A stretch of DNA of 64,000 bases, from IMG/VR virus record IMGVR_UViG_3300027747_002221, positions 124,001-188,000 of that record; one strand, given 5' to 3'. Shown one piece after another: positions 1 to 55,783 of this stretch (positions are counted from its first letter, which is position 1; each line of letters opens with the position of its first letter). Position numbers and translations under genes: made by a program. The notes beneath the pieces were generated by a model. It did no database searches and had not been told where the DNA came from. It saw only the letters and a program-made list of their open reading frames with translations.

Positions 1-434
1 GGTTGAGAATTTTTGTCAGTTTTTACCACATAGGTATTATCCTGATTAACTAAAGCTTCCCCGCCGGAACTTTTAACAACATTATTTATGGATTTATCCT
101 GTGCTTGTCTAACCAATGATGCTACAGACGGAGAGGGTTTGCCCGCAAGTGTTCCTATAATTAACGGGCGTTGCATCTCCGATCCATCCATAAACCAACC
201 CACAACCCAAGTTCCTGGTACTATACCTACAGGTGCAGAACCTACTCCTGACGTTGCTGCAGATGTTATAGACTGCATAGGTAGGGCCCATGGTAAATCT
301 GAGGTAGGCAATGCTGTAGTATCCGCAGTATGATGACCGAATACTCTTACCCGGCATCTTCCTAGTTTTTCTGGATCGTCTCTATCCTCAACAACTCCAG
401 TCCACCAGACAAGCTCATTATTACCAAATATCAT
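1..434 (-). CDS. gp5: Baseplate hub/tail lysozyme gp5, N-terminal OB-fold part (runs off the window start)
   Basis: Manual translation from ATG at 434: MIFGNNELVWWTGVVEDRDDPEKLGRCRVRVFGHH...LPWA...GTWVVGWFMDG; classic gp5 N-terminus; ATGA overlap with the upstream gene. Not in the ORF track. Confidence 0.93.
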   Translation of the reverse strand, partial: MIFGNNELVWWTGVVEDRDDPEKLGRCRVRVFGHHTADTTALPTSDLPWALPMQSITSAATSGVGSAPVGIVPGTWVVGWFMDGSEMQRPLIIGTLAGKPSPSVASLVRQAQDKSINNVVKSSGGEALVNQDNTYVVKTDKNSQ

Positions 435-1774
435 TTTCTAGCCTTGTTATATTCTGTCTTTGAAAAAGAATCCTTAACCACATTCATAGTAATATAATGT
501 GTTTTTGGATTTATTTTATGAGATAAATTTGTTATTAGGTAATACCCGGTATATGCCTCATCTCGTTTTGAGGATGTTTTATCCTCGGATGTAGGTGCAC
601 CCGGTTCTCCTTTTGGAAAAATTATTTTTATAATGTTTCCTACTTCTACATCCGTTCTTCCGGGAATTACAATTTCCATTTTAAAATTATTTAATTCCAG
701 CAAATTTGATCTTCTATTACCAAACGTAACCTTTGGTATTTGATCAAAATTGTTTTCCACCTTAGTGAATAATTTAGGAGTACTATAATTAGTTTTTTGG
801 TATGAGTATGGATTTCTTAATATATTCTTATCAAACATTGGGTAGGAATCTTTACTATTTAGATGTGCGTATTTGTCAAATTCCTCGGGATGTTCATATT
901 CTTTTATCTCATATGTTTTGTTGTACACATCGATATCTACTAAAGAACTTGCAAGATATCCTAGTCTACTGTTGTCCAATTGATTTACTGCGGTTTCCAC
1001 AGATAAGGATTTTATCGCATACATAGCCTTGTGTTTTTCATCTACAGATAAAGTTTTTATATATGCCTCAGAATAAACATATTCACCTATTGAGAATGCC
1101 TCTAAATTGGATAATATACTATCCATACTACCAAAATAAAATCCTTTGGTAGTTTCCCAGAATAAAAAATTTGCAGCTTTTCCTGCAGATGGTAAGCATT
1201 TTCCTGCCAACCAATTAATACATTGGATTGGTGTCCACCCGGGACTAATAAATTTTAGTATATTTTTTGGATATTCTAAAAACGTTAAAGTAGTCTTTAT
1301 GCTAGGTCCTGTAATTATATTCCTATTAGCTTGTATGTAATCTATAAAAATATCGTTTATTACTTTTGATGGAGTTCCTTCAAAAGATTTGTATATGGGA
1401 TTTAACACATCATTAAATCCCTCAGTAGACATGATACCTAATTCATAAATTATTGTACTACTATCGTTCACATAATTTTTATTTTCTAATGAATATATTC
1501 TAAAAGTTTTATATATACTATCTTTGTCAGTTAAGCTGGGGGTTTTTACATTTATAAAAAGATATTCATCTCCTATTAATGGAAAAAGTGAGGTTAAATT
1601 TCTGCTATCAGATAAAATTATTGATCCTGTAACAATAGGATCGAATACGCTTTCATAAAGATTAATTTCTACAAGATAATCTAAAAGACTTATACTTATA
1701 CCTTTATTTAATGAAATTAACTTGATTTCATTTATTTCTATTTGCCCGGGGGCTTGTAATATTTCTTGAGACAT
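431..1774 (-). CDS. Baseplate hub/tail protein (gp27/GpD-like)
   Basis: 447 aa between gp53 and gp5; C-terminal IVIPGRTDVEVGNIIKIIFP...YTGYYLITNLSHKI resembles contractile-tail hub proteins. Confidence 0.6.
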   Translation of the reverse strand: MSQEILQAPGQIEINEIKLISLNKGISISLLDYLVEINLYESVFDPIVTGSIILSDSRNLTSLFPLIGDEYLFINVKTPSLTDKDSIYKTFRIYSLENKNYVNDSSTIIYELGIMSTEGFNDVLNPIYKSFEGTPSKVINDIFIDYIQANRNIITGPSIKTTLTFLEYPKNILKFISPGWTPIQCINWLAGKCLPSAGKAANFLFWETTKGFYFGSMDSILSNLEAFSIGEYVYSEAYIKTLSVDEKHKAMYAIKSLSVETAVNQLDNSRLGYLASSLVDIDVYNKTYEIKEYEHPEEFDKYAHLNSKDSYPMFDKNILRNPYSYQKTNYSTPKLFTKVENNFDQIPKVTFGNRRSNLLELNNFKMEIVIPGRTDVEVGNIIKIIFPKGEPGAPTSEDKTSSKRDEAYTGYYLITNLSHKINPKTHYITMNVVKDSFSKTEYNKARK

Positions 1775-2382
1775 TATTGATTTATTAATGCATTATAATC
1801 TGCAAGAACTCTCTCAACAATAGGTGCCTTTAAGATTTTAATTAATCTATAACTCTCATTAGTTAATTCCTCTACCTCATAATTACTTTGAAAATCTGTT
1901 CCTATTTCCGATTCTTTATATGCAATGGGTGTATTAATACCACCATCATCGGGAGTTTCTATGATTAATCTTTTTGGATTTTTGTGTGTAGAGTCTTCCA
2001 ATAAAACAAAGAATGTGTCGACCTGATATCCTTTTGCATTTACCGCTCTATTAGTAGTAAAAATATCTCTTTCGGTGCCATACTTACTTTGTGTTTGTTT
2101 TATTAAATTATCCTGACTAAGAGGCCATTCAAATCTAGGATCTATAATATTATTCGTTAGTAATATTAACCAATGCAAATTAGGTGTGCCATAAAATCTA
2201 AAAGATAATTGTTCGGGGGTTTCCCCACCCAACACCTCATAAGTTTCAAAATAGGAATTGTTATCCTGAAATTCTTTAGATAAAATTGCTCTCTTAAATA
2301 TATCCTGTATTACCTGTTCGGACTGATTATCATCTAAGGTATAAGCAATTCTCGGAAAGTTCTCAAAAAAATTAGTAGCCAT
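1774..2382 (-). CDS. gp53: Baseplate wedge subunit gp53
   Basis: FFENFPRIAY; GETPEQLSFRFYGTPNLHWLILLTNNIIDPRFEWPLS. Confidence 0.9.
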   Translation of the reverse strand: MATNFFENFPRIAYTLDDNQSEQVIQDIFKRAILSKEFQDNNSYFETYEVLGGETPEQLSFRFYGTPNLHWLILLTNNIIDPRFEWPLSQDNLIKQTQSKYGTERDIFTTNRAVNAKGYQVDTFFVLLEDSTHKNPKRLIIETPDDGGINTPIAYKESEIGTDFQSNYEVEELTNESYRLIKILKAPIVERVLADYNALINQ

Positions 2383-3496
2383 TTGCTTGTATTCCTTCAG
2401 ATGTCATCTGTTCTAATTCTTGAAACTTAAGAGACATTCCGATTTCAATAGGAGCACCATCAGGAAATGTTACAAATTGGTCCCCGCCATAATCAACAAC
2501 TAGATCTGTTAAGGCGCATCTGGCAAATTTATGTAAATAATTATTTTCTTTATCTTTATAGTAATACTTTATATCAAATTCAGAAGGATATATGTAAAAA
2601 AATTTAGTTGCGGAAAGTTCTGGATGCATATGTTTTTTAAATGTGGCTATAATATTTTTTACCTTGTCAGTTTCTTGAGGGGTTTTTGGTAAAAATCTAT
2701 AATTAAATTGAAATGTTCTATAATTAACAGATTCAAATAACACTTCTCTAAATGGATTCGTTTTTGTTCTAGAACTTAATTCTAATAAATCAGAAATAAC
2801 TCCTCCTCCTCCAGATTTTAATGTAGGAATTTTAGCTATTTCCGCAAGTGCTCTTGCCCGCGTTTCAGCATCCCCTAGACTTTCAAGTTTTGTTTTAGCA
2901 GAACTTTGAATTAATATGCCTGCTATGGCACCTATATCTTTATTAGTATAGTTTACTCCATATTGAACCACGGGTTTTTCTGATACATGTAATGTAATTA
3001 CATCAGTAAGTCTAGATGTACTACCTGATTTAAAAGCAGGTAAATCTATTGCTTGTACTATTTCAGATATAGCTGCCCCTGCAACCCCTGCGCCTATGGT
3101 TTTTAACACCAGACCTTTCCAATCTCTAACCTTAGACCCGCTTCCAATTGCAACAGCAGCAGCGGTTCCCGCTGCAATAGTTCCTGCATTATCTAATACG
3201 TTTTGGCCTCCAGAAAAAATTTGATCTTGTGCTAACCTAGAACCACGATTATTTAATGCGTTTATTTCTTTTTGTTTGGCGTCGCTTACGAAAAATGATC
3301 GTTGCTCGTTATTCTTTCCAGTTTTTGCTTTATCTCTAGTATTGATAAAAAATGCAACATAGTTTTGTAAATCTGGTTTTTCCCGCAGACCTTCTGGATA
3401 CTCTAACGCACCAACATTATAATCTGTTAGATATTGATTTTTAAAATTTTTTGTTATGTAATCTTCTATTTCAGATGCGCTACCTAAATTAGACAT
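2372..3496 (-). CDS. gp48: Baseplate tail-tube cap gp48
   Basis: NPFREVLFESVNYRTFQFNYRFLPK...YPSEFDIKY...CALTDLVVDY. Confidence 0.88.
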   Translation of the reverse strand: MSNLGSASEIEDYITKNFKNQYLTDYNVGALEYPEGLREKPDLQNYVAFFINTRDKAKTGKNNEQRSFFVSDAKQKEINALNNRGSRLAQDQIFSGGQNVLDNAGTIAAGTAAAVAIGSGSKVRDWKGLVLKTIGAGVAGAAISEIVQAIDLPAFKSGSTSRLTDVITLHVSEKPVVQYGVNYTNKDIGAIAGILIQSSAKTKLESLGDAETRARALAEIAKIPTLKSGGGGVISDLLELSSRTKTNPFREVLFESVNYRTFQFNYRFLPKTPQETDKVKNIIATFKKHMHPELSATKFFYIYPSEFDIKYYYKDKENNYLHKFARCALTDLVVDYGGDQFVTFPDGAPIEIGMSLKFQELEQMTSEGIQANGY

Positions 3497-3505
3497 ATAT
3501 TTCTT

Positions 3506-3513
3506 TATAAATA
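3506..3513 (+). promoter_or_regulatory. T4-type late promoter TATAAATA for gp4/gp2/gp54/gp26
   Basis: Exact TATAAATA 28 nt upstream of the gp4 start. Confidence 0.8.
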
Positions 3514-3528
3514 TTGTTGGGACACTAT

Positions 3529-3536
3529 TATTTATA
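3529..3536 (-). promoter_or_regulatory. T4-type late promoter TATAAATA for gp48/gp53/hub/gp5
   Basis: tatttata on the plus strand, just upstream of gp48; paired with the 3506 promoter in the same 45-nt intergenic gap. Confidence 0.8.
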
Positions 3537-3540
3537 TTAA

Positions 3541-3999
3541 ATGCTATATACCAAAACCTATAAGGGTAAGTTTAGAACCAAGAATCCTTCGAAATATAGA
3601 GGGGATGTGAACAATATTGTATATCGTTCCTTATGGGAATTGCGTTTTATGAAATGGTGTGATTCAAATTCTTCTGTTCAAGAATGGGGATCTGAAACGG
3701 TAATTGTGCCATATATTTCTCCATTGGATAAAAAAGTGCACAGATATTTTGTAGATTTCTACATCAAAGTATTGGATAAAACTGGAGGATTACAGAAATA
3801 CCTAATAGAAATAAAACCTGAAAGATTCACTAAACCCCCAACTATCCCTGCAAGGAAAACAAAAGCATTCATAGATGAAGTATTTCAATATGGTGTAAAT
3901 GAAGCTAAATGGAAAGCAGCATTCGAATTTTGTCAGGACAGAAATATGAAATTTATGGTATTAACCGAAAAGGATTTAGGACTAATTAATGGCAGATAA
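3541..3999 (+). CDS. gp4: Head completion protein gp4
   Basis: YRSLWELRFMKWCD...WGSETVIVPYISPLD...HRYFVDF...IEIKP. Confidence 0.93.
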   Translation: MLYTKTYKGKFRTKNPSKYRGDVNNIVYRSLWELRFMKWCDSNSSVQEWGSETVIVPYISPLDKKVHRYFVDFYIKVLDKTGGLQKYLIEIKPERFTKPPTIPARKTKAFIDEVFQYGVNEAKWKAAFEFCQDRNMKFMVLTEKDLGLINGR

Positions 4000-4570
4000 T
4001 ATATTCCAAACTGTTAGTATGAAAGCAGGTGACACTGAAAAGTCATACAATTGGTATAGAGAACAAGTTAAAAATCTTGGATCTAACTTATCCGGTACTC
4101 AAATACTAAGAAATGAAAAATTAACTTCAAGAATACGCCCAGGTGAAATGTACTTGTTTATGTACGATCCAAAACTTAAAAAGACTTTGCCCTATTATGA
4201 CGCGGTTCCCTTAGTATTACCTTTTCAAATTGTAAAAGATGGGTTTCTAGGTATTAACCTTCACTATCTACCGTATCTTGCAAGATTCAATCTATTGGGC
4301 GAATTAAACAAATTGACATTAGATAAAAGAATAACTGAAAATACAAGAATACAAATATCCTGGCAAATACTAAATAGTTCATCTAAGTATTTAGCAGCAA
4401 CTGCCTGTGTTAAACATTACTTAACCTCACATTTAAGATCAAGATTTTTAAAAATAAATTATACAGATTGGATCACTGCATCTATGTTACCTGTTGAAAG
4501 ATTTAAATCTGATTCAGGAAACGATCCGTCAAAGGCAAAAGTTTGGCGGGACACTTCGAAGAAAATATAG
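3989..4570 (+). CDS. gp2: DNA end protector gp2
   Basis: PGEMYLFMYDPKLKKTLPYYDAVPLV...GFLGINLHYLP. Confidence 0.92.
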   Translation: MADNIFQTVSMKAGDTEKSYNWYREQVKNLGSNLSGTQILRNEKLTSRIRPGEMYLFMYDPKLKKTLPYYDAVPLVLPFQIVKDGFLGINLHYLPYLARFNLLGELNKLTLDKRITENTRIQISWQILNSSSKYLAATACVKHYLTSHLRSRFLKINYTDWITASMLPVERFKSDSGNDPSKAKVWRDTSKKI

Positions 4571-10055: not shown

Positions 10056-10318
10056 AGGGGTAACTTCCCTCTCTTTTTAAAATAGTTGCCGTCTTCTGCT
10101 TCTATTTGAACCTTATCTTTTAAGGATTGATTTATTAGTTTAGAAATAGATTCAATGTCTATATCTACTTCTTCGCAATATTGAATTATTGCTTCCATAT
10201 AACTAATATCCTGTGCTGCAACTCTACCCTCAATATAAAGTGAAAATTCATTAGGCGATCTAAATTTCTTGGTTATAATTAAGCTATCTGTTAATATGTA
10301 TTGTAATTCTTCACTCAT
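10052..10318 (-). CDS. gp33: Late-transcription coactivator gp33
   Basis: FSLYIE...ISYMEAIIQYCEE..ID.E.ISKLIN.SLKDKVQIEA. Confidence 0.9.
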   Translation of the reverse strand: MSEELQYILTDSLIITKKFRSPNEFSLYIEGRVAAQDISYMEAIIQYCEEVDIDIESISKLINQSLKDKVQIEAEDGNYFKKRGKLPL

Positions 10319-10989
10319 ACTTTTTCCTGGAATAATACGTCATCCATAAAACTCATAAACGTATCTTTATCCACACCAAAATTAACCATCATTGCCGGTG
10401 TGTGAGGATTCTTTTTCTGAAACCTACAATAATGATTATGCTTTTCGTAATAGTCTCTATCCGCATAGGGCACTCCTACATTATAAAGGTAAAAGTTTAA
10501 ATTGTCAATAACTGTTTGTTTAAGTTGATCTAATTCTTCCTGCGTTTGTATATTGCCCGCAGCCAGCATATTTGGACTAAAAATTTCAAGTGCCCATTCA
10601 GGTAACTGTCTTGGTTTAGACCAAGTTAATTTAGACATCTTAGTCTGATACCATTCATATAAAAATGAATCTCCAACTTTAGAAAAATCATGAAATGCCC
10701 CAGTAATTTTATTTTGTCCGCAAACTATATCAAAACCAAATATAGGATCAGGGCAATTATAGTGAGGAAAAATACACATATGCATAACCCACATCTTTTT
10801 AGTTGCAGATGCATCTACAATTTCTATATGTGCTCTTCTAAAATTTTTACTAGTCCAGACATAATTTTTCCAAGAAAAATCCACATCAGTATGCGAATAT
10901 TTAGGATTAATTTCTTCTATACTATATAATTTAAATTTATCTATAAGTGTTGTTGATAATGCTTGCGCCTGCGAAAACATTTCAATCAT
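10315..10989 (-). CDS. Ferredoxin-dependent bilin reductase (PcyA/PcyX family)
   Basis: FRRAHIEIVD, VMHMCIFP, PIFGFDIV, GAFHDFS, LPEWALEIFS, QKKNPHT; adjacent to heme oxygenase. Confidence 0.85.
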   Translation of the reverse strand: MIEMFSQAQALSTTLIDKFKLYSIEEINPKYSHTDVDFSWKNYVWTSKNFRRAHIEIVDASATKKMWVMHMCIFPHYNCPDPIFGFDIVCGQNKITGAFHDFSKVGDSFLYEWYQTKMSKLTWSKPRQLPEWALEIFSPNMLAAGNIQTQEELDQLKQTVIDNLNFYLYNVGVPYADRDYYEKHNHYCRFQKKNPHTPAMMVNFGVDKDTFMSFMDDVLFQEKV

Positions 10990-11518
10990 TATATTCTTTT
11001 ACCATTTCAATGTTATGTTTAAATGCTATAATAGCTTCATCTGCTAAAGACACATCCAATTTAGATCTTACTGTTTTAATAAGTGTAGGAATATCCTCAA
11101 ACTTATACATATGCCCACTGCCAGGAGTTAACTTAGCTAGTTGTTGCCCTCCAAACATATCTCCCATATGTCTAACATATACATGAGCTAATAACTTCTT
11201 AGGATCATCTTGTATACTGTCTAAGTATTGTAGATATGTTAGGGTAGACGGTCTAATCTTAAAAACGGTAGTTGCAAGATCTTCACAAAGTTCAGCCCAA
11301 TCCTGTTGTGCTAATTTTGCTCTTTTAAGATCTTCTATACCGTCAAATATAGCATGTTTGGAAGCTAATATTTCCATTAGTCCATATACATGAAATAATT
11401 GATAAACATAATCTGCATATTTTTCTTTATTTACATTGCCTGCAAATATAGATTTTATAAATGGCTGAGATTCTGCTTCCGCATGAACATCGGCTGTCAA
11501 TTCTTTTAGTGTGCTCAA
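10982..11518 (-). CDS. Heme oxygenase (HemO/Ho1-like)
   Basis: LKELTADVHAEAE (proximal His), LLAHVYVRHMGDMFGGQ distal-helix motif. Confidence 0.92.
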   Translation of the reverse strand: MSTLKELTADVHAEAESQPFIKSIFAGNVNKEKYADYVYQLFHVYGLMEILASKHAIFDGIEDLKRAKLAQQDWAELCEDLATTVFKIRPSTLTYLQYLDSIQDDPKKLLAHVYVRHMGDMFGGQQLAKLTPGSGHMYKFEDIPTLIKTVRSKLDVSLADEAIIAFKHNIEMVKEYND

Positions 11519-12141
11519 TTTGTTTTCCTTGAATTTGCTGCAGTACCGATATATGGTCTATGATCCCATTTATAGTCACGGTAATTGCCATTCTTATTTA
11601 CATAGTGTAAAAATGCTTGTGTTTGTCTTTGACCTTGATACGCATCACGCCAATGATTTAACGTATCGCCTTTATAAACAATAAGATCACCTGGCCATAA
11701 GTTAATGGCTTTCTTTTCACCTGTTAAAGTTTCAAACCAAATTTCCCATGGCTCTTCATCAATGGAAATATTAACGGTTGCTGAATACTCGCAACTTGGT
11801 CTATCCTTGTGTATAGCCATTGTTGCCCCATTATAATATATCCTAGCATACGTGTACGTAGGATATAAATTTTTACCTGTTATTTCTTCTATAAGAGGTT
11901 GAAGTTGTAAGGATAATGCTTCGAACGGGAGTGCAGAATAATATGCGAAACTATTGGATATCTGCTCATCATTAAATGCAAATTTATTATCTTCACTTTG
12001 TCCGTTTGCCATGTATTGTAATTTTCTTAGCAACTCAAACTCTAAATCCATATGGTCTAGTTGTTCTAGAGGAAGTACTCCCCGTACAATCTCATATAAA
12101 TCTGTCGCAAACGTTGGTTCATCTAATGTAGTTGTAGTCAT
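11515..12141 (-). CDS. 2OG-Fe(II) oxygenase superfamily protein
   Basis: HKDRPSCEYSATV (HxD), PGDLIVYKG..LNHWR, QAFLHYV. Confidence 0.88.
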   Translation of the reverse strand: MTTTTLDEPTFATDLYEIVRGVLPLEQLDHMDLEFELLRKLQYMANGQSEDNKFAFNDEQISNSFAYYSALPFEALSLQLQPLIEEITGKNLYPTYTYARIYYNGATMAIHKDRPSCEYSATVNISIDEEPWEIWFETLTGEKKAINLWPGDLIVYKGDTLNHWRDAYQGQRQTQAFLHYVNKNGNYRDYKWDHRPYIGTAANSRKTN

Positions 12142-12163
12142 ATCATTATCCTAAAAAATTTGT

Positions 12164-12187
12164 GTTAGCTTTTAAGGATAAGCTAAC
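12164..12187 (-). terminator. Probable intrinsic terminator after rubrerythrin
   Basis: GTTAGCTT-N8-AAGCTAAC stem; T-run downstream on the minus strand. Confidence 0.55.
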
Positions 12188-12215
12188 AAACCCGTATTAT
12201 ATTAGAAACTACTTG

Positions 12216-12653
12216 TTACTGTGTTTCTTTATGCGCAGCTAATGCCTTGGTAAAACGATTAGCATGGCTACGTTCAGCTTTTGCTAATGTTTCAAACCAA
12301 TCTGCTACTTCTTTAAACCCTTCGTCACGAGCAGTCTTAGCCATACCTGGATACATGTCAGTGTATTCATGTGTTTCGCCGTGAATAGCTGATTCCAAAG
12401 CTTCAGTAGTAGTTTTAGCACTCATACCTGTACCTGGATCACCCGCACCACCCTCGATCAAATATTCCATGTGGCCATGGGCGTGACCAGTCTCACCTTC
12501 AGCAGTACTACGAAACAAGGCGGCAATATCATTATCACCTGCTACATCTGCCATGTTTGCAAAATATAAGTATCTACGATTAGCTTGCGATTCCCCTGAG
12601 AATGCAGCCTTCAAGTTTTCCTCTGTGCGAGTACCTTTAATTTTTTCACTCAT
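12216..12653 (-). CDS. rbr: Rubrerythrin (short form lacking the rubredoxin domain)
   Basis: [23 protein letters not shown]...[10 protein letters not shown]...[14 protein letters not shown]...AERSHA diiron motifs. Confidence 0.93.
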
Positions 12654-14015: not shown

Positions 14016-14133
14016 ACGTGTGTTTATGATCTATGGACTTTCGTAATGCTTTTAACCACAATTTCTTTTCTTTAACTTTATCATGATTGATACACGCTTG
14101 ATACAACTTCTTTACTATTTTTTGAACTTTCAT
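14002..14133 (-). CDS. Possible small basic protein (43 aa)
   Basis: Manual: MKVQKIVKKLYQACINHDKVKEKKLWLKALRKSIDHKHTYAIK; overlaps the tail of the PlcP-like gene. Confidence 0.4.
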   Translation of the reverse strand: MKVQKIVKKLYQACINHDKVKEKKLWLKALRKSIDHKHTYAIK

Positions 14134-14884
14134 TATCGTTTTCCTTAGTCCAGGTTACAATTTCCCATCGTCCATTATAATGTTCAACAAGAGCAGTACA
14201 AGATTCAACCCAGTCTCCGTCGTTCATATATATGATTCCATCAATCTCTTTAATCTCAGCATGATGTATATGTCCACAAATAACTCCATCATACCCTCGC
14301 TTTTTACAATATCCTGCGAGGTTGTTTTCAAACTGAAACATAAAGTCTGATGCTTTTTTTACTCTATGTTTTAAATACTTAGATAACGACCAATATCCAA
14401 ATCCAAATTTATGACGAACCCAATTAAAACGAGAATTCCAATCTAGAACTAAATCGTATAACTTATCGCCTAGAAATGCTAACCAAGGTGCAAGTCTAGT
14501 AATACCATCAAATAAATCACCGTGCGTTATCAGGTAGTGTTTACCATCAACACCTATATGTTCCGTTTGATTTTTTATTTCAATTAAACCAAAACTGAAA
14601 CCATATGGTATCATTGGCCTTAAGAATTCATCATGATTACCAGCAATGTAGATTACTCTTGTACCTCGTTTAGCGTGTCCAAGAATTCTTCGTACAACAT
14701 TGGTATGAGATTGCTTCCACCGCCATTTATTCTGTTGTATTTTCCATACATCAATAATATCACCTACAAGATATAAAGTCTCGCAAGTATTATGTTTTAA
14801 AAAATTATTTAACTTATCAGCTTGACAATCTCGAGTACCTAAATGAACATCACTTATGAATATTGTTTTATAGGTTCTTTGCAT
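14081..14884 (-). CDS. PlcP-like phospholipase C (LpxH/LpxH2-family metallophosphoesterase)
   Basis: TIFISDVHLGTRDCQA, LYLVGDIID, GNHDEFLR, HGDLFD, WLAFLGD, YWSLS, DGVICGHIHHA, NDGDWVESCTA. Confidence 0.85.
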   Translation of the reverse strand: MQRTYKTIFISDVHLGTRDCQADKLNNFLKHNTCETLYLVGDIIDVWKIQQNKWRWKQSHTNVVRRILGHAKRGTRVIYIAGNHDEFLRPMIPYGFSFGLIEIKNQTEHIGVDGKHYLITHGDLFDGITRLAPWLAFLGDKLYDLVLDWNSRFNWVRHKFGFGYWSLSKYLKHRVKKASDFMFQFENNLAGYCKKRGYDGVICGHIHHAEIKEIDGIIYMNDGDWVESCTALVEHYNGRWEIVTWTKENDNESSKNSKEVVSSVYQS

Positions 14885-14897
14885 AAGTTACCTTTAA

Positions 14898-15213
14898 ATT
14901 AATGATAGGTTATTCTGTTACGAGGAAACCTACCGAAACCCTAAGCAGTGTTTAGGCTGCTAATGCGAACTGTTCGTCGTTTGCGTTTACGTTTTTTGCT
15001 TGATTAACGGTCATCGCCTACCGTGCTGTCCACGCTGTTACTATTTGCCCTGTCGAAACCAATGTCAGGCCCATTAGAAAGAACTCTTTAGTATAGTCTA
15101 TAGCACTTGTCTGTCTCTATACAGGATGAAAAATTCTTTCTGGTGGACCTGGCGGGAGTCGAACCCGCGTCCAGAACATATTTCTCTTTGCTTCATACAG
15201 CAATAACTTACTC
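14898..15213 (-). ncRNA. ssrA: tmRNA, circularly permuted two-piece form
   Basis: Minus strand: T-arm GCGGG-TTCGACT-CCCGC and ...CAGGTCCACCA (ends 15141) come before GGGCCTGACATTGGTTTCGACAGG (starts 15072); 7-bp acceptor stem with G3:U; tag frame ANDEQFALAA-TAA (14984-14952). Outer ends are approximate. Confidence 0.95.
14901..14950 (-). repeat. Direct repeat copy A (3' part of the tmRNA coding piece)
   Basis: See 13240-13289. Confidence 0.92.
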
Positions 15214-15315
15214 TTTTACATTATAAAAAAGACTTTTTGCTATCCAGAACATATAGTTGACTACAACTAAGATGCCCCACATATAAACCCAATGCCAATT
15301 TTCAAACATAAGAAC

Positions 15316-15450
15316 TCACTTACCTTGACCTCTATACTTTTTAAAACTAGTACGTCTGGTTTTATTCATAGCACTTGTTTTAGGTTTGCTACCACCTTGG
15401 CAGGTGCGCTTACTAATAACGTGACCTTTTGTATTTCTACCTGCTGCCAT
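15316..15450 (-). CDS. Small basic conserved-type phage protein (44 aa)
   Basis: Manual: MAAGRNTKGHVISKRTCQGGSKPKTSAMNKTRRTSFKKYRGQGK; GGAG SD. Confidence 0.7.
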   Translation of the reverse strand: MAAGRNTKGHVISKRTCQGGSKPKTSAMNKTRRTSFKKYRGQGK

Positions 15451-15514
15451 AATCTACTCCTTATTATATATGAACTACTAACAAAAATCAAGACAATAGT
15501 TGTTCAAACCATGT

Positions 15515-16168
15515 CTAAATTAATTTTATACGCTTATATTCTAATCTTAAATCCCTAAAACCATTTATCCATGTATTACGTTTTTCCACAAAGATTAATG
15601 GGTCTTCCTCATCCACCGCAATTAAAATTACTATTTGAGGTACAGGGATCTTTGTCATTTCTTCAAAAGCAACGGCATATGCGGAACATTGCATAAAATA
15701 GTCGTGAATATTATCCTTTTCTTTAATCCTTTTAGATGTTTTAAAGTCTATAACAGACATTTTACCATTATATTCTGCAATACAGTCTACTGTACCAGCA
15801 ACTTCTAAATGATCAGAAAATAACGATTGTTCTAACGCATATATGTTGTTTATATTATGTAGTATAGGTTTAAACTTATTCCACATCTCTATATCAAACA
15901 TATCTGGATTCACAGTTTCGTTCAATAGATATTTTTCAGCTAAAGAATGAATTCGAGTACCACGTCTTGCAGCAGTACTCGAAATTCTGTTCGCTTCTTC
16001 TTCACCCACTCGCTTTCGCCATGCCATAATAGATTGTTTTTTAAGCAATCCGGTAACAGTAGTAACTGATGGATATTTGTTACCTGTTGGTGTTTGATAT
16101 ACCCTAGTACCGTCTTCATTTGTAACACGGTTGAGCTTTGGTAGCTCACATTCTATATGATTAAACAT
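15515..16168 (-). CDS. PD-(D/E)xK exonuclease (Cas4/ExoA-like)
   Basis: YPSVTTV, RGTRIH, EVAGTVDCIAEYNGKMSVIDFKTS, YFMQCSAYA. Confidence 0.88.
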   Translation of the reverse strand: MFNHIECELPKLNRVTNEDGTRVYQTPTGNKYPSVTTVTGLLKKQSIMAWRKRVGEEEANRISSTAARRGTRIHSLAEKYLLNETVNPDMFDIEMWNKFKPILHNINNIYALEQSLFSDHLEVAGTVDCIAEYNGKMSVIDFKTSKRIKEKDNIHDYFMQCSAYAVAFEEMTKIPVPQIVILIAVDEEDPLIFVEKRNTWINGFRDLRLEYKRIKLI

Positions 16169-37492: not shown

Positions 37493-37636
37493 TCATAGAA
37501 GATTATTTACCTGTAAGAATTTATATAGTTTTATATAATAGGAAAAGGATGCAGGATACACTTCGGGATCGGGTAATTTCTCACCCCAGCGTTCCTGCAT
37601 TTTGGTATAAAAATCAATTATTTCTTGATCTGTCAT
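37493..37636 (-). CDS. Small conserved-type phage protein (47 aa)
   Basis: Manual: MTDQEIIDFYTKMQERWGEKLPDPEVYPASFSYYIKLYKF...; ATGA overlaps at both ends. Confidence 0.65.
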   Translation of the reverse strand: MTDQEIIDFYTKMQERWGEKLPDPEVYPASFSYYIKLYKFLQVNNLL

Positions 37637-38490
37637 ACATCAACATACTTTAAAGTAAATCTTTCAGCACGTTCTTCATAATTGTCATATCCTCTTGGAT
37701 TGCATACAATACGAGTAGAACCAATCATATAATCAAAATCCTCGTGTGTATGTCCGTGAGTCCACAACTTAATCTGAGGATGATCTAATATGAATGCAGA
37801 TAGATCTGAACTATAGCCACCGTTCATTATTTCTTCATCTTTGTATCGAGGATGAGTCGATAGTTTAGATGGTGCATGATGCCCGACAACTACAAACTTT
37901 TGATTAAATTTACCCTCAGTCATAATGCGAATGTATTCCAACATTTCTCTGTGGTCAACAACTGCATCTTCTGGTGCAAAACGACTTTTACGTTTATGAA
38001 ATTTACCATCCTCATCTTTAAAGATTGTTACCCGATTACTATTTTGAACACAACGGAAGTCATTCATCATGCTTTTCATGTGAAGTAAGGTGATTGGATC
38101 TTCATTATTCATATCAGTCCACAAGGTGCCACCGATGAATGTAGTGTCATCAATAACTTTAGTCTCCTTGTCTAGCAAATACACATTGCTTAACATATTA
38201 GAATCAAGCATTGATTGTAGTTTGTTTTTAGACTCACCAAAATCTCCGTTGTAATGCTCATGGTTACCCATGATAAAGATTACGTGTGGAAATTCGAATG
38301 AACAACGCTTAAAGAAATCTGTAATGCGATTACTGCGAGAACCCTCAAGGAAATTGTGTGGATCAGGTTGACCGATATCGGCAGCAACACAGATATCACC
38401 GCCAAGAATTAATACATCGGCGTTGTCTGTGTTTTGTAAATTGATATCACCAAACTCGAGGTGAATATCTGAGCAAATTGCTACTCTCAT
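37633..38490 (-). CDS. Calcineurin-like metallophosphoesterase
   Basis: SDIHLEF, GGDI, MGNHEHY, GGTLWTD, HHAPS, WTHGHTH, CNPRGY. Confidence 0.9.
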   Translation of the reverse strand: MRVAICSDIHLEFGDINLQNTDNADVLILGGDICVAADIGQPDPHNFLEGSRSNRITDFFKRCSFEFPHVIFIMGNHEHYNGDFGESKNKLQSMLDSNMLSNVYLLDKETKVIDDTTFIGGTLWTDMNNEDPITLLHMKSMMNDFRCVQNSNRVTIFKDEDGKFHKRKSRFAPEDAVVDHREMLEYIRIMTEGKFNQKFVVVGHHAPSKLSTHPRYKDEEIMNGGYSSDLSAFILDHPQIKLWTHGHTHEDFDYMIGSTRIVCNPRGYDNYEERAERFTLKYVDV

Positions 38491-50750: not shown

Positions 50751-51695
50751 TTATCCGGTAAATGTTATCGTTCCTGGTCCAGTAAATGTATAATATACAT
50801 TGCCATTTGAAGTAGTAACAGTGTTACTACCTGTAATATTAGATGTTGCAGTAAAATATGCAGGATGTGCAAAAATAGCCACGCCTGATCCGCCAGCTCC
50901 GCTTGCCGATGTGGCGGTGTGTGCACCAGCACCACCTCCACCGCCGGTATTTACGTTACCGGCAACAGCCTGGAATGCTGTACCTGGCGGATTCTCTCCG
51001 CCGCTCCGTCCGCCTCCGCCGAGGCCACCGGGACTAGGAGCAACGGGAGAAAAACTATAATCTGCAGCTCCACCGCCGCCGCCGGCATAATAATTACCAT
51101 TTACCCATGCATTACCATCGCCGCCATATCCTTGTAATGTTCCAGTTTTTCCTGTAGTACCAGCGCCACCGCCCCCACCGCCATACTGTCCGCCACCTGT
51201 TCTTGAATTTCCTGGGGCGCCAGGATTTCCCTGTCCTGCTGTACCTGTACCGCCCGTATTGTTTGGGCCTCCACTACCTGCTGAATTTCCTGCACCTCCG
51301 CCCGATCCCCCGGGACGACCATTGTACTGTGGTGAGAAGTATCCTGTGCCGCCACCGCCACCGCCTGCAGCAGTTAATGTGCCTGTTAACGGAGAAGCTA
51401 AGATTGAGGGTGTACCGGGTTCGCCCCAGTTACCGCCATATGGCGCGCCAGCATTTCCTGCACCACCGCCACCTATTTGTGTAACGGCAAAGCTAGCAAA
51501 CACTCCTGTTGATAATACAAAACTGTTTGCAATATATCCACCTGCACCACCGCCGCCACCATAATAATTGGCACCTCCACCGCCGCCTCCGCCAACCAAT
51601 AGATATGATAATGTAAAGGGCGGGGGTGGGGGTGGCGGTGGTTCGATGTATTGTGCGCCGCCAGATAATACTGCGCCGCCTGTTAAAATTAACAT
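50751..51695 (-). CDS. Glycine-rich adhesin-like protein 2
   Basis: Leader + poly-Pro + polyglycine motifs; ends TFTGPGTITFTG. Confidence 0.75.
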   Translation of the reverse strand: MLILTGGAVLSGGAQYIEPPPPPPPPFTLSYLLVGGGGGGGANYYGGGGGAGGYIANSFVLSTGVFASFAVTQIGGGGAGNAGAPYGGNWGEPGTPSILASPLTGTLTAAGGGGGGTGYFSPQYNGRPGGSGGGAGNSAGSGGPNNTGGTGTAGQGNPGAPGNSRTGGGQYGGGGGGAGTTGKTGTLQGYGGDGNAWVNGNYYAGGGGGAADYSFSPVAPSPGGLGGGGRSGGENPPGTAFQAVAGNVNTGGGGGAGAHTATSASGAGGSGVAIFAHPAYFTATSNITGSNTVTTSNGNVYYTFTGPGTITFTG

Positions 51696-51704
51696 ATTAT
51701 TTCC

Positions 51705-52847
51705 TTAAAATAAGATTGTACCTGAGCTGGTAAATTGATAAACTCTATATCCACCACTTACTGTTATTGTAGGTGAGCCGGTAGTTGTAGTAGCTGCTGT
51801 GTAAGTATCAGGATAACGTATAATTACTATACCTTTACCGCCTGCACCGCTTGGACCACCGCCACCTCCGCCTCCACCGGTATTTTCTGCTCCGTCTAAT
51901 ATGCAGTTTGCAATGGCATTAGTTTGCCCTGGTTTTGCACCACCGCCGCCTGCGCCGCCATACCCTACTCTACGTCCTGCGCCGCCACCTGCATAATACC
52001 TACCTGTACTAGTAATTGCTACTCCTGTATTTGTAGCTGTACCGTTTACATTCATGTAATAAATACCTGTACTACCTGTACCCGTACCTCTTGCAATTAT
52101 ATACGAATTAGCTGGAATTCCGGTACCAGTAACTTGTGTACCTACATCAATTATTCCATCACTAACTGCGGTTACAGTTAATGTATTATTTGAGGAAAAT
52201 ACTGATGCTGTTCCAGTGAAAGGAATTGTTGCATTGCTTTTTACCCCAATGCCACCAAAGCCCTCTGTAGCGGCTGTGCCACCTTGACCACCTGCACCAC
52301 CACCACCCGAACCGTTATCGTTACTATTATTTGTACCGCAATCATATCCCTGGCCGGTAGTTCCTAAACCTTGTACACCCATAATTTGGGCGGCACCTCC
52401 ACCACTACCACCATTACCAACACCTTCTGTGTCATAACGGCGAGGCGAAGTGCCAGAGCTGTTTGGTCCGCCAGCGCCGCCACCAAGTGATGTAATTGTT
52501 GTTATACCACTACCAGATATGGACGAGTTACTACCTTTAAATCCGGAAGTTTCTTCACCATTTACGCTTGCACCACCTGCACCAACTGTAATAGTGTATG
52601 TTACATTTGAACTAATACCAGTTAAGACAGATTCTGCATTTGCACCTCTACCTGAAGATTCGCCGGCGATTGAAGAACGATATCCACCAGCACCACCGCC
52701 ACCTGAGCCAATTGCATCATATCCTCCACCGGAGCCGCCGCCTGCAACAACTATAAATTCTAACGTAGTAGGGGGAGGAGGTGGGGGAGGAGGTATATAT
52801 GTTGCGCCTCCAAATATTGTTGCTCCGCCTGTGATTGTAATTGGCAT
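51705..52847 (-). CDS. Glycine-rich adhesin-like protein 3 (with inserted domain)
   Basis: Same scaffold; extra segment of about 70 aa before YYAGGG. Confidence 0.75.
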   Translation of the reverse strand: MPITITGGATIFGGATYIPPPPPPPPTTLEFIVVAGGGSGGGYDAIGSGGGGAGGYRSSIAGESSGRGANAESVLTGISSNVTYTITVGAGGASVNGEETSGFKGSNSSISGSGITTITSLGGGAGGPNSSGTSPRRYDTEGVGNGGSGGGAAQIMGVQGLGTTGQGYDCGTNNSNDNGSGGGGAGGQGGTAATEGFGGIGVKSNATIPFTGTASVFSSNNTLTVTAVSDGIIDVGTQVTGTGIPANSYIIARGTGTGSTGIYYMNVNGTATNTGVAITSTGRYYAGGGAGRRVGYGGAGGGGAKPGQTNAIANCILDGAENTGGGGGGGGPSGAGGKGIVIIRYPDTYTAATTTTGSPTITVSGGYRVYQFTSSGTILF

Positions 52848-52859
52848 CTTATTTCCTAA

Positions 52860-53816
52860 TTAAAATGTGATTGTTCCTGAGCTGGTCCAAATATATATTC
52901 TATATCCACCTTCTATAATAACATTTGGACTGCCCGTAGTATTCGATGCGGCTGTGTATGTATCTGCATATCTAATAATAGCTACACCTTTTCCGCCGTT
53001 CCCTCCACTTGCTGATCCTGCTGGGTATGAAACTCCTCCACCACCACCGCCTGTGCCTGAAGTTCCATTTGTTCCTGGTATACTCGCGCCGGTGGCGCCT
53101 GCTCCGCCACCACCAGCTCCACCAGCTCCACCTGCGGCACTTGCTCCACCCCCACCGCCGCCGCCGGCGAAATATACATTACTGCCAACAACATTTCCTA
53201 TATTATAAGTTGTGGCTTGTGTTGTAGTAATGATTGTCGAAACTTTACCGATACCACCCGCTTTGCCTGTAGTGCCAACGCTCGCCCCGTCCTCACCTGC
53301 AGCACCTGCTCCACCTCCGCCTCCGCCTGAATAAGCTCCGCCAGTACCACCACGATTACCAAATCCTCCACTAGCACTAGTAGGTTGTAGTCCTGCCCCA
53401 TATGTGGTATGATCGGCTCCGTTCCACGATGCTCCGCCACCTGAACCACCTGCTGTGGCATTTGTATATGGACCATAAAAACCACCCGTGCCTCCACCAA
53501 TAGCTATAACATTACTCGAAGCCAAGATAGATGAGTTCGAACCATTATTGCCGCCGCCGCCGGTGCCGCTTACGCCTGTTCCACCTGCTCCAACAATTAC
53601 TGTTATGAGAGACCCTATGGTAATAGGTAATGCAGTATTTGCTACATATCCTCCTGCACCACCACCACCGCACCCTAAATTAGGAGCACTTGCGCCCGAA
53701 CCACCGCCAGCTACTACCAGATATTCTACTGAACTAAGTACCGGTGGAGGAGAAGGTGGAGGAGGTGTTAAATTAAATCCTGAAAGTGATACGCCGCCTG
53801 AGATTGTAATTGGCAT
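52860..53816 (-). CDS. Glycine-rich adhesin-like protein 4
   Basis: Same scaffold; ends WTSSGTITF. Confidence 0.75.
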   Translation of the reverse strand: MPITISGGVSLSGFNLTPPPPSPPPVLSSVEYLVVAGGGSGASAPNLGCGGGGAGGYVANTALPITIGSLITVIVGAGGTGVSGTGGGGNNGSNSSILASSNVIAIGGGTGGFYGPYTNATAGGSGGGASWNGADHTTYGAGLQPTSASGGFGNRGGTGGAYSGGGGGGAGAAGEDGASVGTTGKAGGIGKVSTIITTTQATTYNIGNVVGSNVYFAGGGGGGGASAAGGAGGAGGGGAGATGASIPGTNGTSGTGGGGGGVSYPAGSASGGNGGKGVAIIRYADTYTAASNTTGSPNVIIEGGYRIYIWTSSGTITF

Positions 53817-53824
53817 CTTATTTC

Positions 53825-53884
53825 CTACCTAAATGTAATTGTTCCAGATTGCCAGAATCTGAAAATGATGTTTTGCGTTTGCAT
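53825..53884 (-). pseudogene. Orphan C-terminal remnant of a glycine-rich paralog (19 codons)
   Basis: MQTQNIIFRFWQSGTITFR, versus NIIYRFWQSGTIIFN at the end of 54824..55774. Confidence 0.8.
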
Positions 53885-53888
53885 AAAT

Positions 53889-54815: not shown

Positions 54816-54823
54816 ATTGTTTC

Positions 54824-55774: not shown

Positions 55775-55783
55775 ATTATGTTC

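What the first reader, a model, noticed from the sequence alone, without database searches (positions are those of the whole stretch)
14898..15213. Circularly permuted (two-piece) tmRNA carried by a phage
Seen: the acceptor piece (T-arm, CCA at 15141) precedes the coding piece (GGGCCUG at 15072). A 68-nt intervening segment has self-complementary ends (AGAAAGAA 15076-15083 / TTCTTTCT 15134-15141). The G3:U pair and tag ANDEQFALAA are intact. Known: two-piece tmRNAs occur in Alphaproteobacteria, some cyanobacteria and a betaproteobacterial lineage (for example Dechloromonas, which has a very similar tag). Phage tmRNAs are known, but I do not recall a characterised permuted one. Inference: it is host-derived, functional in ribosome rescue during infection, and a host marker.
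Basis: partly seen in the sequence, partly recalled or inferred. Interest (0 to 1): 0.8.

Follow-up and report, generated by a model that had tools for sequence, protein, structure and literature searches.

The report
Two-piece tmRNA gene in lake phage
A large T4-like phage from lake water carries a complete, circularly permuted ribosome-rescue RNA (tmRNA) gene; such genes are already known in phages, and this one belongs to a large group seen almost only in phages, so it is a poor guide to the host.

Summary
On the minus strand, ARAGORN and two Rfam models (RF01850 134 bits, RF04321 138 bits) call a permuted tmRNA. The acceptor piece ends in CCA at 15141. A 68-nt spacer follows, then the coding piece from 15072, with tag ANDEQFALAA. 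The window is a T4-like phage (IMG/VR contig of 222 kb from lake water).

Across 106 related phage genes, 94% of pair cells are paired (44-50% in shifted controls), G3:U is invariant, and the spacer's closing stem covaries. Tag positions 1-3 and 6-10 are kept through synonymous codon changes, so the tag frame is probably translated.

Permuted tmRNAs in phages are already published (Melnitz, pelagiphages, Caulobacter phages; Buchholz 2022), so this is a new member of a known kind.

The "host marker" inference is not supported. Hundreds of phage contigs carry this type. In the tree most of them, including the window's, lie apart from all 46 sampled bacterial genes. A cultured cyanophage (BUCT-ZZ01) carries the same phage type. 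No cellular gene with this tag was found in limited scans.

Lake metatranscriptomes show high depth over the coding piece, but only for the family as a whole. Processing in this phage is untested.

The parts
15141..15213 (-). Acceptor piece of the tmRNA; its 5' end is not mapped. Contents: 5' strand of the outer helix 15202..15197; 5' strand of the inner helix 15178..15172; T-arm 15168..15152; 3' strand of the acceptor stem 15151..15145; encoded ACCA 15144..15141.
   Evidence: ARAGORN 3' tRNA domain; Rfam alignments; covariation on 106 phage homologues.
15073..15140 (-). Intervening segment (spacer), 68 nt, with no ATG. Its ends pair (15141..15132 with 15085..15076, extended to 13 bp in the fold), which prolongs the acceptor stem in the precursor. 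Inferred to be cut out.
   Evidence: Sequence. Fold z = -4.6. All 10 closing-stem pairs show changes on both sides and about 90% of cells are paired in the family. Duplex energy of the spacer ends has median -9.9 against -3.2 kcal/mol for mismatched partners.
14905..15072 (-). Coding piece. Contents: 5' strand of the acceptor stem 15072..15066 (G3 at 15070); 3' strands of the inner helix 15052..15046 and outer helix 15029..15024; small hairpin 15023..15008; tag frame; 3' hairpin 14932..14906. The 3' end is not mapped.
   Evidence: The 3' hairpin and the conserved CCUCGUAACAGAA loop are kept across the family, and conservation stops after the hairpin.
14952..14984 (-). Tag reading frame: resume codon GCA at 14984..14982, peptide ANDEQFALAA, stop TAA at 14954..14952. 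U and A stand at -5 and -4 before the resume codon (GUAAAC|GCA).
   Evidence: In a sample chosen without regard to the tag, positions 1-3 and 6-10 are kept with synonymous codon changes.
15208..15309 (-). Mini-ORF of 33 aa (MFENWHWVYMWGILVVVNYMFWIAKSLFYNVKE), hydrophobic, just upstream of the acceptor piece. The block 15322..15223 is about 85% identical to the whole tmRNA spacer of other phages (L310, L038, L057, L326), where this ORF sits between CCA and G1. The TATAAT at 15225..15220 aligns with the TTTGAT end of that spacer.
15463..15491 (-). Best promoter-like site upstream (TTGATT, 17 nt, TATAAT; 10 of 12 matches). It is followed by a Shine-Dalgarno sequence and a 44-aa basic ORF (15450..15316). 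It is a candidate start of a transcript that runs through the tmRNA.
   Evidence: This is a consensus match only.
15515..16168 (-). PD-(D/E)XK exonuclease gene upstream. It is the synteny anchor: relatives with 65-100% identical exonuclease carry a permuted tmRNA just downstream.
14081..14884 (-). Metallophosphoesterase gene immediately downstream. Its ribosome-binding site and ATG (14884) occupy the place of the last hairpin of the Rfam beta model, and no terminator lies between it and the tmRNA.

Best explanation
This is a complete, circularly permuted ssrA gene of a T4-like lake phage. It was inherited within a phage lineage rather than recently copied from the host. Shown: the gene order, all tRNA-like elements, and the tag frame. 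Also shown: the structure is conserved by covariation, the tag peptide is conserved through synonymous changes, and the gene holds the same position in related phages. Inferred: the gene is transcribed as one precursor, probably together with the small ORFs upstream and the genes downstream, since no terminator follows it. In that precursor the spacer's long stem stacks on the acceptor stem. Host RNase P would cut 5' of G1 (15072). Host endo- and exonucleases would trim back to the encoded CCA (15141). This would leave two RNAs held together by the acceptor stem and two helices. Host alanyl-tRNA synthetase would charge the RNA through G3:U. With host SmpB and EF-Tu it would enter stalled ribosomes. 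Translation would resume at GCA, add ANDEQFALAA and stop, so the ribosome is freed and the truncated protein is marked for host proteases. The likely benefit is a sustained supply of free ribosomes during infection, when host transcription stops and mRNA is being degraded.
For: Identity: ARAGORN permuted call with tag; RF01850 134.3 bits and RF04321 137.7 bits. Structure under selection, on 106 phage homologues less than 93% identical: 94.3% of cells paired against 44-50% when partners are slid; 35 of 40 pairs changed on both sides; 0 of 500 shuffles reach the observed values; G3:U in 106 of 106; T-arm and acceptor stem 100% paired. Spacer stem: about 90% paired with covariation, z = -4.6, ends far more complementary than mismatched controls. 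Tag translated: in 81 unique genes found with a tag-independent pattern, 80 start A(A/S)N and 77 end AA; Leu8 uses TTA, TTG and CTA and Ala9 uses four codons, while positions 4-5 vary freely. Vertical inheritance: the tmRNA lies just downstream of the exonuclease gene in relatives at 65-100% identity and is absent in those at 60% or less. Phage lineage: starred phage-only sets hold the window. CCA is encoded in 143 of 152 phage genes against 13 of 43 bacterial ones, and the spacer median is 86.5 nt against 29 nt. RNA: lake metatranscriptomes give depth 260-4265 over 14884-15059 against 0-23 over flanking genes.
Against: No experiment shows processing, charging or tagging for any phage two-piece tmRNA. 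The RNA-seq signal comes from short contigs shared with relatives; their loose ends match other IMG/VR variants. Depth over the window-specific 5' end and spacer is zero. So expression of this particular gene is not shown, and summed DNA of many relatives could add to the depth. The central part of the long helix does not pair as in the Rfam beta model (pairs flagged). No convincing promoter lies directly upstream. SmpB was not found among the 20 small and medium ORFs tested, so function depends on host SmpB accepting this RNA. The host is unknown.
Confidence: 0.8

Rival explanations
1. Recent capture from the host: the gene is a copy of the host's own ssrA, so it names the host as a betaproteobacterium with a two-piece tmRNA.
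For: RF01850 is the best clan model. Dechloromonas and Azonexus tags differ by one residue. The ultimate origin of the lineage in Betaproteobacteria is likely.
Against: The window falls in a starred phage-only set, and all 46 sampled bacterial permuted genes lie elsewhere. Cyanophage BUCT-ZZ01, isolated on Synechococcus elongatus, carries the same phage type. A genome scan for the core plus this tag gave 0 hits (too strict as one search shows). A metagenome scan for short-spacer genes with this tag gave 19 contigs of 37-46% GC (one of 56%), and the neighbours tested in two of them were phage-like. Phage genes differ in a consistent way: encoded CCA and a threefold longer spacer. Buchholz 2022 reports a mismatch of the same kind for Melnitz.
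Confidence: 0.15
2. The RNA works against host trans-translation or redirects it: it competes with host tmRNA for SmpB, or adds a tag with a different fate, rather than simply adding rescue capacity.
For: A tRNA-like-domain-only tmRNA of mycobacteriophage DS6A is of a kind shown to inhibit tmRNA (PMC4131195). A sister clade of the window's phage has the odd tag ANDNSYRMVA, which lacks the LAA end. Buchholz 2022 raises selective tagging as a possibility.
Against: The window's tag is a canonical proteobacterial-style degradation tag ending ALAA. 66 of 81 tags in the unbiased family sample end ALAA. The resume context and the whole tRNA-like domain are intact.
Confidence: 0.1
3. A remnant of an integration site (attP carrying a piece of ssrA) or a decaying pseudogene without function.
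For: tmRNA genes are common integration sites and phages often carry ssrA fragments (PMC4383910 abstract).
Against: Both pieces are complete, with no mismatch in the acceptor stem, T-arm or inner helix. The structure and the tag are under purifying selection across more than 100 phage genes. The genome is T4-like, and no integrase appeared among the roughly 40 ORFs tested.
Confidence: 0.03

Closest known systems
Two-piece (permuted) tmRNA of Betaproteobacteria, Rfam RF01850 (Rhodocyclales such as Dechloromonas, Azonexus, Thauera)
   Same: Same gene order, tRNA-like domain and inner and outer helices, the small hairpin after the helix, the tag position, and the conserved loop CCUCGUAAC after the tag. 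The score is above the gathering threshold. The Dechloromonas/Azonexus tag ANDEQFAIAA differs by one residue.
   Different: It sits in a phage. The spacer is 68 nt, against a median of 29 nt in the sampled bacteria. CCA is fully encoded, as in only 13 of 43 bacterial genes. The central helix pairs of the model are not formed, and the model's terminal hairpin is replaced by the next gene's ribosome-binding site. In the tree it lies apart from all sampled bacterial genes.
Two-piece tmRNA of OM43 phage Melnitz and of pelagimyophages (Buchholz et al. 2022, PMC9004378)
   Same: A permuted tmRNA carried by a T4-like aquatic myophage without an integrase, whose type does not match what the host would predict. 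The window's gp32 and bilin reductase have their best hits in pelagimyophages HTVC008M and Mosig.
   Different: Those are reported as alphaproteobacterial type, and in Melnitz the gene is joined to a glutamine riboswitch. Here the type is beta, no riboswitch reaches Rfam thresholds in the window, and blastn finds no similarity to those phages' tmRNAs.
Unannotated permuted tmRNAs of Synechococcus phage BUCT-ZZ01 (ON615601) and Ralstonia jumbo phage RsoM2USA (MG752970)
   Same: Both match beta-type permuted models: RF01850 94.5 and 92 bits. BUCT-ZZ01 falls inside the phage-only part of the tree. They are the only cultured-phage relatives found.
   Different: Only about 69-70% identical over the coding piece. 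The tags differ: ANDETFSMALAA in BUCT-ZZ01, and ARAGORN's call for RsoM2USA looks unreliable. The phage backbones and hosts differ.
Caulobacter two-piece tmRNA (Keiler, Shapiro and Williams 2000) and phiCbK-like phage tmRNAs
   Same: The one two-piece tmRNA whose processing from a single precursor and whose function were shown experimentally. It is the model for the mechanism proposed here. phiCbK-like phages are listed as carrying permuted tmRNAs.
   Different: Alphaproteobacterial type with a different sequence and tag. This comparison rests on my own knowledge and on citations in PMC9004378; it was not tested here.
One-piece tmRNAs of mycobacteriophages (Bxz1 group) and Bacillus phage G; tRNA-like-domain-only RNA of DS6A
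   Same: Phage-carried ssrA as an auxiliary translation gene (PMC4131195).
   Different: Standard gene order, or no tag frame at all in DS6A; unrelated phages and hosts.

Membership tests
tmRNA, permuted gene form (Rfam RF04321) | Covariance-model score at or above the curated gathering score | tested here: met
   137.7 bits against 47, E 6.5e-27, full model 1-213.
tmRNA, permuted gene form (Rfam RF04321) | tRNA-like domain: 7-bp acceptor stem with G3:U, T-arm, discriminator A and CCA | tested here: met
   GGGCCUG/CAGGUCC plus ACCA and a 5-bp T-arm. In 106 homologues G3:U is invariant, and the acceptor stem and T-arm are 100% paired with changes on both sides.
tmRNA, permuted gene form (Rfam RF04321) | Acceptor (3') piece encoded upstream of the coding (5') piece on one strand | tested here: met
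   3' tRNA domain at gene positions 55-93 and 5' tRNA domain at 162-189.
tmRNA, permuted gene form (Rfam RF04321) | Tag reading frame with an alanine resume codon, a conserved upstream context and a stop codon; peptide under selection | tested here: met
   GUAAAC|GCA ... UAA encodes ANDEQFALAA. Synonymous variation at conserved residues in an unbiased family sample.
tmRNA, permuted gene form (Rfam RF04321) | Precursor processed into two RNAs | tested here: inconclusive
   Metatranscriptome contigs give high depth on the coding piece, none on the spacer and little on the acceptor piece. They are shared with relatives and are contigs, not reads.
tmRNA, permuted gene form (Rfam RF04321) | Alanylation, SmpB binding and trans-translation activity | not testable with these tools
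   Needs biochemistry or genetics.
Betaproteobacterial two-piece tmRNA (Rfam RF01850) | Covariance-model score at or above the gathering score, and best of its clan | tested here: met
   134.3 bits against 84, E 8.8e-41.
Betaproteobacterial two-piece tmRNA (Rfam RF01850) | All helices of the family model are formed | tested here: not met
   Pairs in the central part of the long helix are flagged as non-standard. The terminal hairpin coincides with the ribosome-binding site and ATG of the next gene. The outer helix, inner helix and the other hairpins are formed.
Betaproteobacterial two-piece tmRNA (Rfam RF01850) | Groups within the cellular betaproteobacterial genes | tested here: not met
   The window lies in starred phage-only sets, and the 46 sampled bacterial genes lie elsewhere. 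The bacterial sample is only 120 pattern-selected loci, so this is provisional.
Phage-encoded tmRNA (auxiliary translation gene) | Lies inside a phage genome, not at a prophage-host junction, and is conserved in position among related phages | tested here: met
   T4-like genes on both sides. Same position downstream of the exonuclease gene in relatives at 65-100% identity.
ssrA fragment at an integration site (attP) | Only part of ssrA is present, next to an integrase | tested here: not met
   The gene is complete. No integrase among the roughly 40 ORFs tested; not every ORF was tested.

The most novel reading that the evidence does not exclude
The window's tmRNA belongs to a large lineage of two-piece tmRNAs confined to phages. 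The lineage would have left Betaproteobacteria long ago and now moves among unrelated phages (T4-like, jumbo, cyanophage) in lakes and seas, whatever the host's class. It has its own hallmarks: an encoded CCA, a long structured spacer and a preferred tag, ANDEQFALAA, that was not found in any cellular genome. In part of the lineage the spacer doubles as a small gene for a membrane peptide, and in the window that gene has moved to just upstream of the tmRNA. The gene's precursor would then yield three products.
Probability: 0.4. Interest if true: 0.6.

Novelty: new member of a known kind. Interest (0 to 1): 0.4.

Why it matters
The gene itself is an ordinary, correctly recognised example of something already reported, namely large aquatic phages that carry two-piece tmRNAs. 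Three points have wider use.

- The tmRNA type should not be used to name a phage's host. The same phage type sits in a cyanophage and in phages of unknown hosts, which echoes the Melnitz case.
It is unannotated in at least two GenBank phage genomes, so phage annotation pipelines miss it.
- The conserved stem that closes the spacer, and the small ORFs inside some spacers, are concrete and testable features of how permuted tmRNA precursors are made and cut.

Tried and rejected
- Megablast of 6 kb around the gene against GenBank phages found nothing.
- My first IMG/VR pattern had the wrong spacing and found nothing.
- The first genome scan (core TGGTTTCGACAGGG plus the exact tag) gave 0 hits. 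It was too strict, because only 18 of 124 phage loci with this tag have that core. It therefore does not prove absence from bacteria.
- The tag was not found in the supplements of the tmRNA database paper or of Buchholz 2022, nor in any held paper.
- Sharkady and Williams 2004 is not held.
- RNA evidence cannot be assigned to this phage. The contigs are short, are shared with relatives and branch into other variants.
- SmpB was not among the 20 ORFs of 116-309 aa tested. The rest of the window and of the 222-kb genome was not examined.
- Cyanophage host: heme oxygenase and a bilin reductase are present. However, the reductase is closest to the pelagiphage Mosig enzyme (40%) rather than cyanophage PcyA (about 30%), and no psbA appeared among the ORFs tested. 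The host stays open.
- The TATAAT at 15225..15220 has no -35 partner and aligns with the end of a spacer relic, so I do not call it the promoter.
- I first looked for spacer ORFs with an internal stop only and found no relatives of the window's mini-ORF. Reading the frames through showed them.

Full report
**1. The observation.** Read on the minus strand, window 15213..14905 contains the following in order.
- A T-arm (15168..15152).
- The 3' strand of an acceptor stem, CAGGUCC (15151..15145), followed by ACCA ending at 15141.
- A 68-nt segment (15140..15073).
- GGGCCUG (15072..15066), which pairs with CAGGUCC and gives a G3:U pair.
- Further on, the frame GCA AAC GAC GAA CAG UUC GCA UUA GCA GCC UAA (14984..14952), which encodes ANDEQFALAA.

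ARAGORN reports one gene in the whole window, a permuted tmRNA at 14861-15233(-) with this tag. Rfam gives beta_tmRNA (RF01850) 134.3 bits against a gathering score of 84, and tmRNA_permuted (RF04321) 137.7 bits against 47, both over the full models. The spacer folded with the acceptor stem gives -29.1 kcal/mol, z = -4.6, and no shuffle out of 200 does as well.

**2. The setting.** The window is phage DNA. It encodes gp32, the gp59 helicase loader, baseplate and tail proteins, a large virion protein about 40% identical to those of cyanomyophages, endolysin, PhoH, MazG-like pyrophosphohydrolase, ATP-dependent ligase, and both RNR subunits. The same DNA is IMG/VR contig 3300027747_002221 of 222 kb. 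RNA runs that hold parts of it are lake and river metatranscriptomes. No GenBank phage is close at the DNA level.

The window also encodes heme oxygenase and a bilin reductase. The reductase is nearest to the enzyme of Pelagibacter phage Mosig (40%) and not to cyanophage PcyA (about 30%). gp32 is nearest to pelagiphage HTVC008M (57.5%). The host therefore cannot be named from these genes.

**3. Is the gene alive?** I collected relatives in three ways.
- Through the neighbouring exonuclease gene.
- Through the tag.
- Through a 15-nt core that ignores the tag.

Where ARAGORN made a call at the matched site, it was a permuted tmRNA. I aligned 106 sequences less than 93% identical to each other and scored the structure read off the window. 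The result:
- 94.3% of cells are paired, against 44-50% when the partners are slid by one to three columns.
- 35 of 40 pairs have changes on both sides, and no shuffle out of 500 reaches the observed values.
- The T-arm and acceptor stem are paired in every sequence.
- G3:U is present in 106 of 106.
- The inner 7-bp helix and the outer 6-bp helix that hold the two pieces together both covary.

In the tag-independent sample, 80 of 81 tags begin A(A/S)N and 77 end in AA. Positions 1-3 and 6-10 keep their residues while the codons change: Leu8 is TTA, TTG or CTA, and Ala9 uses four codons. Positions 4-5 vary freely. That pattern is expected only if the frame is translated. The U and A at -5 and -4 before the resume codon are nearly invariant.

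**4. The spacer.** The stem that closes the intervening segment is a family trait, not an accident of this sequence. All ten pairs show changes on both sides and about 90% of cells are paired. The two ends of one spacer pair with a median of -9.9 kcal/mol, against -3.2 for ends taken from different phages. In the precursor this stem stacks on the acceptor stem. It leaves ACC on one side and a short, nearly invariant leader (UGAU; UAAU in the window) on the other. This is the shape of a pre-tRNA whose leader and trailer pair.

Phage genes differ from the sampled bacterial ones in two consistent ways.
- The spacer is longer: median 86.5 nt against 29 nt.
- CCA is fully encoded in 143 of 152 phage genes, against 13 of 43 bacterial genes.

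**5. Ends of the gene.** Conservation across the family stops right after the hairpin 14932..14906. The Rfam beta model's last hairpin falls on the ribosome-binding site and ATG (14884) of the next gene. No terminator follows. Upstream, the only good promoter-like site is at 15491..15463. It is followed by two small ORFs. I infer one long transcript from which the tmRNA pieces are cut, but this is not shown.

**6. RNA evidence.** In three lake metatranscriptomes, contig depth is 260-4265 over 14884-15059. It is 0-42 over the acceptor piece, zero over 15060-15103, and 0-23 over the flanking genes. The contigs are about 50 nt long and branch into sequences that match other IMG/VR tmRNA variants. 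The signal therefore shows that this tmRNA family is abundant in lake RNA libraries. It does not show that this phage's copy is expressed or processed. Summed DNA of many relatives cannot be fully excluded either.

**7. Is it new?** No.
- Buchholz et al. 2022 (PMC9004378) describe a two-piece tmRNA in the OM43 myophage Melnitz.
- They count 53 ARAGORN-permuted tmRNAs among public phage genomes, mostly aquatic. They list Caulobacter, Pelagibacter, Synechococcus and other phages with ARAGORN-permuted calls.
- Huge phages with tmRNA and SmpB are also on record (PMC7162821).
- None of these has been tested at the bench.
- I found two cultured phages with beta-type permuted tmRNAs that are unannotated in their records: Synechococcus phage BUCT-ZZ01 (RF01850 94.5 bits, tag ANDETFSMALAA) and Ralstonia phage RsoM2USA (92 bits).

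**8. But in a tree of the two pieces, the window plus 97 viral sequences are split by a starred branch from all 46 sampled bacterial permuted genes (Rhodocyclales, a few Alcaligenaceae, Cupriavidus) and 13 viral ones. A starred branch or set has at least 95% SH-aLRT support.

With the tag columns removed and more sequences added:
- the window lies in a starred set of 48 made only of viral and metagenome sequences;
- BUCT-ZZ01 lies in another such set of 65;
- all the bacteria lie in a set of 78.

BUCT-ZZ01 was isolated on Synechococcus elongatus. From published work that I did not test here, that host has a cyanobacterial-type two-piece tmRNA. The phage type thus occurs in a phage whose host is not a betaproteobacterium.

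A genome scan for the core plus this tag found nothing, but that pattern was too strict. A metagenome scan for short-spacer genes with this tag found 19 contigs, of 37-46% GC apart from one of 56%. The neighbours I tested in two of them (L382, L387) were phage-like; two ORFs of the 56% GC contig matched no family. Viral contigs nearest the bacterial side of the tree (L017, L112) also carry phage genes.

The bacterial sample is partial and the tree is unrooted. The safe statement is that the gene is of betaproteobacterial type by ancestry, is inherited and exchanged among phages, and does not identify the host.

**9. Inheritance in this phage's own lineage.** Relatives with 94-100% identical exonuclease carry the gene 180-285 nt downstream of it, with tags ANDEQFALAA or ANDSQFALAA. 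A 79% relative has ANDEQFALAA. A 69% relative has ANDEVYALAA about 1.9 kb downstream. The 65% group has ANDNSYRMVA. Seven relatives at 51-60% have none in the DNA held for them.

**10. A side finding.** The block 15322..15223, just upstream of the acceptor piece, is about 85% identical to the entire spacer of the tmRNA genes of L310, L038, L057 and L326. In those genes a Shine-Dalgarno sequence right after CCA precedes a small hydrophobic ORF (MFENWHWVY.WGI...). In the window that ORF (15309..15208, 33 aa) stands outside the tmRNA gene, and the window's own spacer has no ATG. About 20 of 148 distinct phage spacers have such an SD plus ATG ORF. Fifteen of these are strongly hydrophobic, and in nine the stop codon is the UGA of the conserved leader, 4 nt before G1. 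I did not test whether these peptides are made.

**11. Verdict.** The most likely function is ribosome rescue with host SmpB, AlaRS and proteases. It is a new member of a known kind. The host-marker inference should be dropped. The most novel reading still open is a phage-restricted tmRNA lineage with its own architecture, including coding spacers.

Noticed in passing
window 15208-15322 (-); L310, L038, L057, L326, L017, L020, L336 spacers: A 33-aa hydrophobic mini-ORF just upstream of the tmRNA is homologous to ORFs that lie inside the tmRNA spacer (between CCA and G1) in other phages. About 20 of 148 distinct phage spacers carry an SD plus ATG ORF, often ending at the UGA 4 nt before G1.
   Followed up: partly
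window 15316-15450 (-) and 15463-15491 (-): A 44-aa very basic ORF (MAAGRNTKGHVISKRTCQGG...KKYRGQGK) with a strong Shine-Dalgarno sequence, preceded by the best sigma-70-like site of the region (TTGATT, 17 nt, TATAAT). Function unknown.
   Followed up: no
window 10315-12653 (-): A pigment and iron gene cluster: a ferredoxin-dependent bilin reductase (closest to Pelagibacter phage Mosig at 40%, cyanophage PcyA about 30%), heme oxygenase and rubrerythrin. Such genes suggest a cyanophage, but here they resemble the pelagiphage version.
   Followed up: partly
L400 (Synechococcus phage BUCT-ZZ01, ON615601, record 116861-117279) and L401 (Ralstonia phage RsoM2USA, MG752970, about 331650-332060): Both GenBank records hold a beta-type permuted tmRNA (RF01850 94.5 and 92 bits) that is not annotated. 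In BUCT-ZZ01 two 'hypothetical protein' CDSs overlap it.
   Followed up: yes
L135-L144, L152 (relatives with 65% identical exonuclease): The sister clade's tmRNA tag is ANDNSYRMVA. It ends in MVA instead of LAA, so it may not be a normal ClpXP degradation signal.
   Followed up: no
L228, L270 (Cupriavidus); L172, L195, L196, L241, L271 (Pelistega, Oligella, Alcaligenaceae): Two-piece tmRNA genes occur in Burkholderiales families; in this sample, members of Burkholderiaceae (Paraburkholderia, Burkholderia, Caballeronia) have one-piece genes. The Cupriavidus pair groups, weakly, with phage sequences L017, L056 and L112. I did not check whether these copies are second copies carried on prophages.
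   Followed up: no
window 50751-56701 (-): A row of similar-sized ORFs (305-380 aa), at least three of which match the same family of unknown function (phrog_2295), in a block of 47-52% GC inside a 38% GC window.
   Followed up: partly
window 3541-3999 (+): An ORF with a TnsA-like endonuclease N-terminal domain, on the opposite strand next to baseplate and tail genes. It may be a homing-endonuclease-type insertion.
   Followed up: no
L018 1932-2007; L400 1680-1755: A tRNA with anticodon CUA (reads UAG; ARAGORN labels it tRNA-Pyl) lies close to the tmRNA in a 135-kb IMG/VR phage contig and in BUCT-ZZ01. It is a possible suppressor tRNA.
   Followed up: no
window 14081-14884 (-) and 37633-38490 (-): Two metallophosphoesterase genes in one window. 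The first starts 22 nt after the tmRNA's 3' hairpin.
   Followed up: no
L007, L016, L032, L018, L281, L301 (IMG/VR, several on contigs of 135-364 kb): tmRNA spacers of 200-232 nt, far longer than any sampled bacterial one, in contigs several of which also carry tRNA genes near the tmRNA. ARAGORN missed some family members altogether (about 24 of 108 loci with the core pattern).
   Followed up: no
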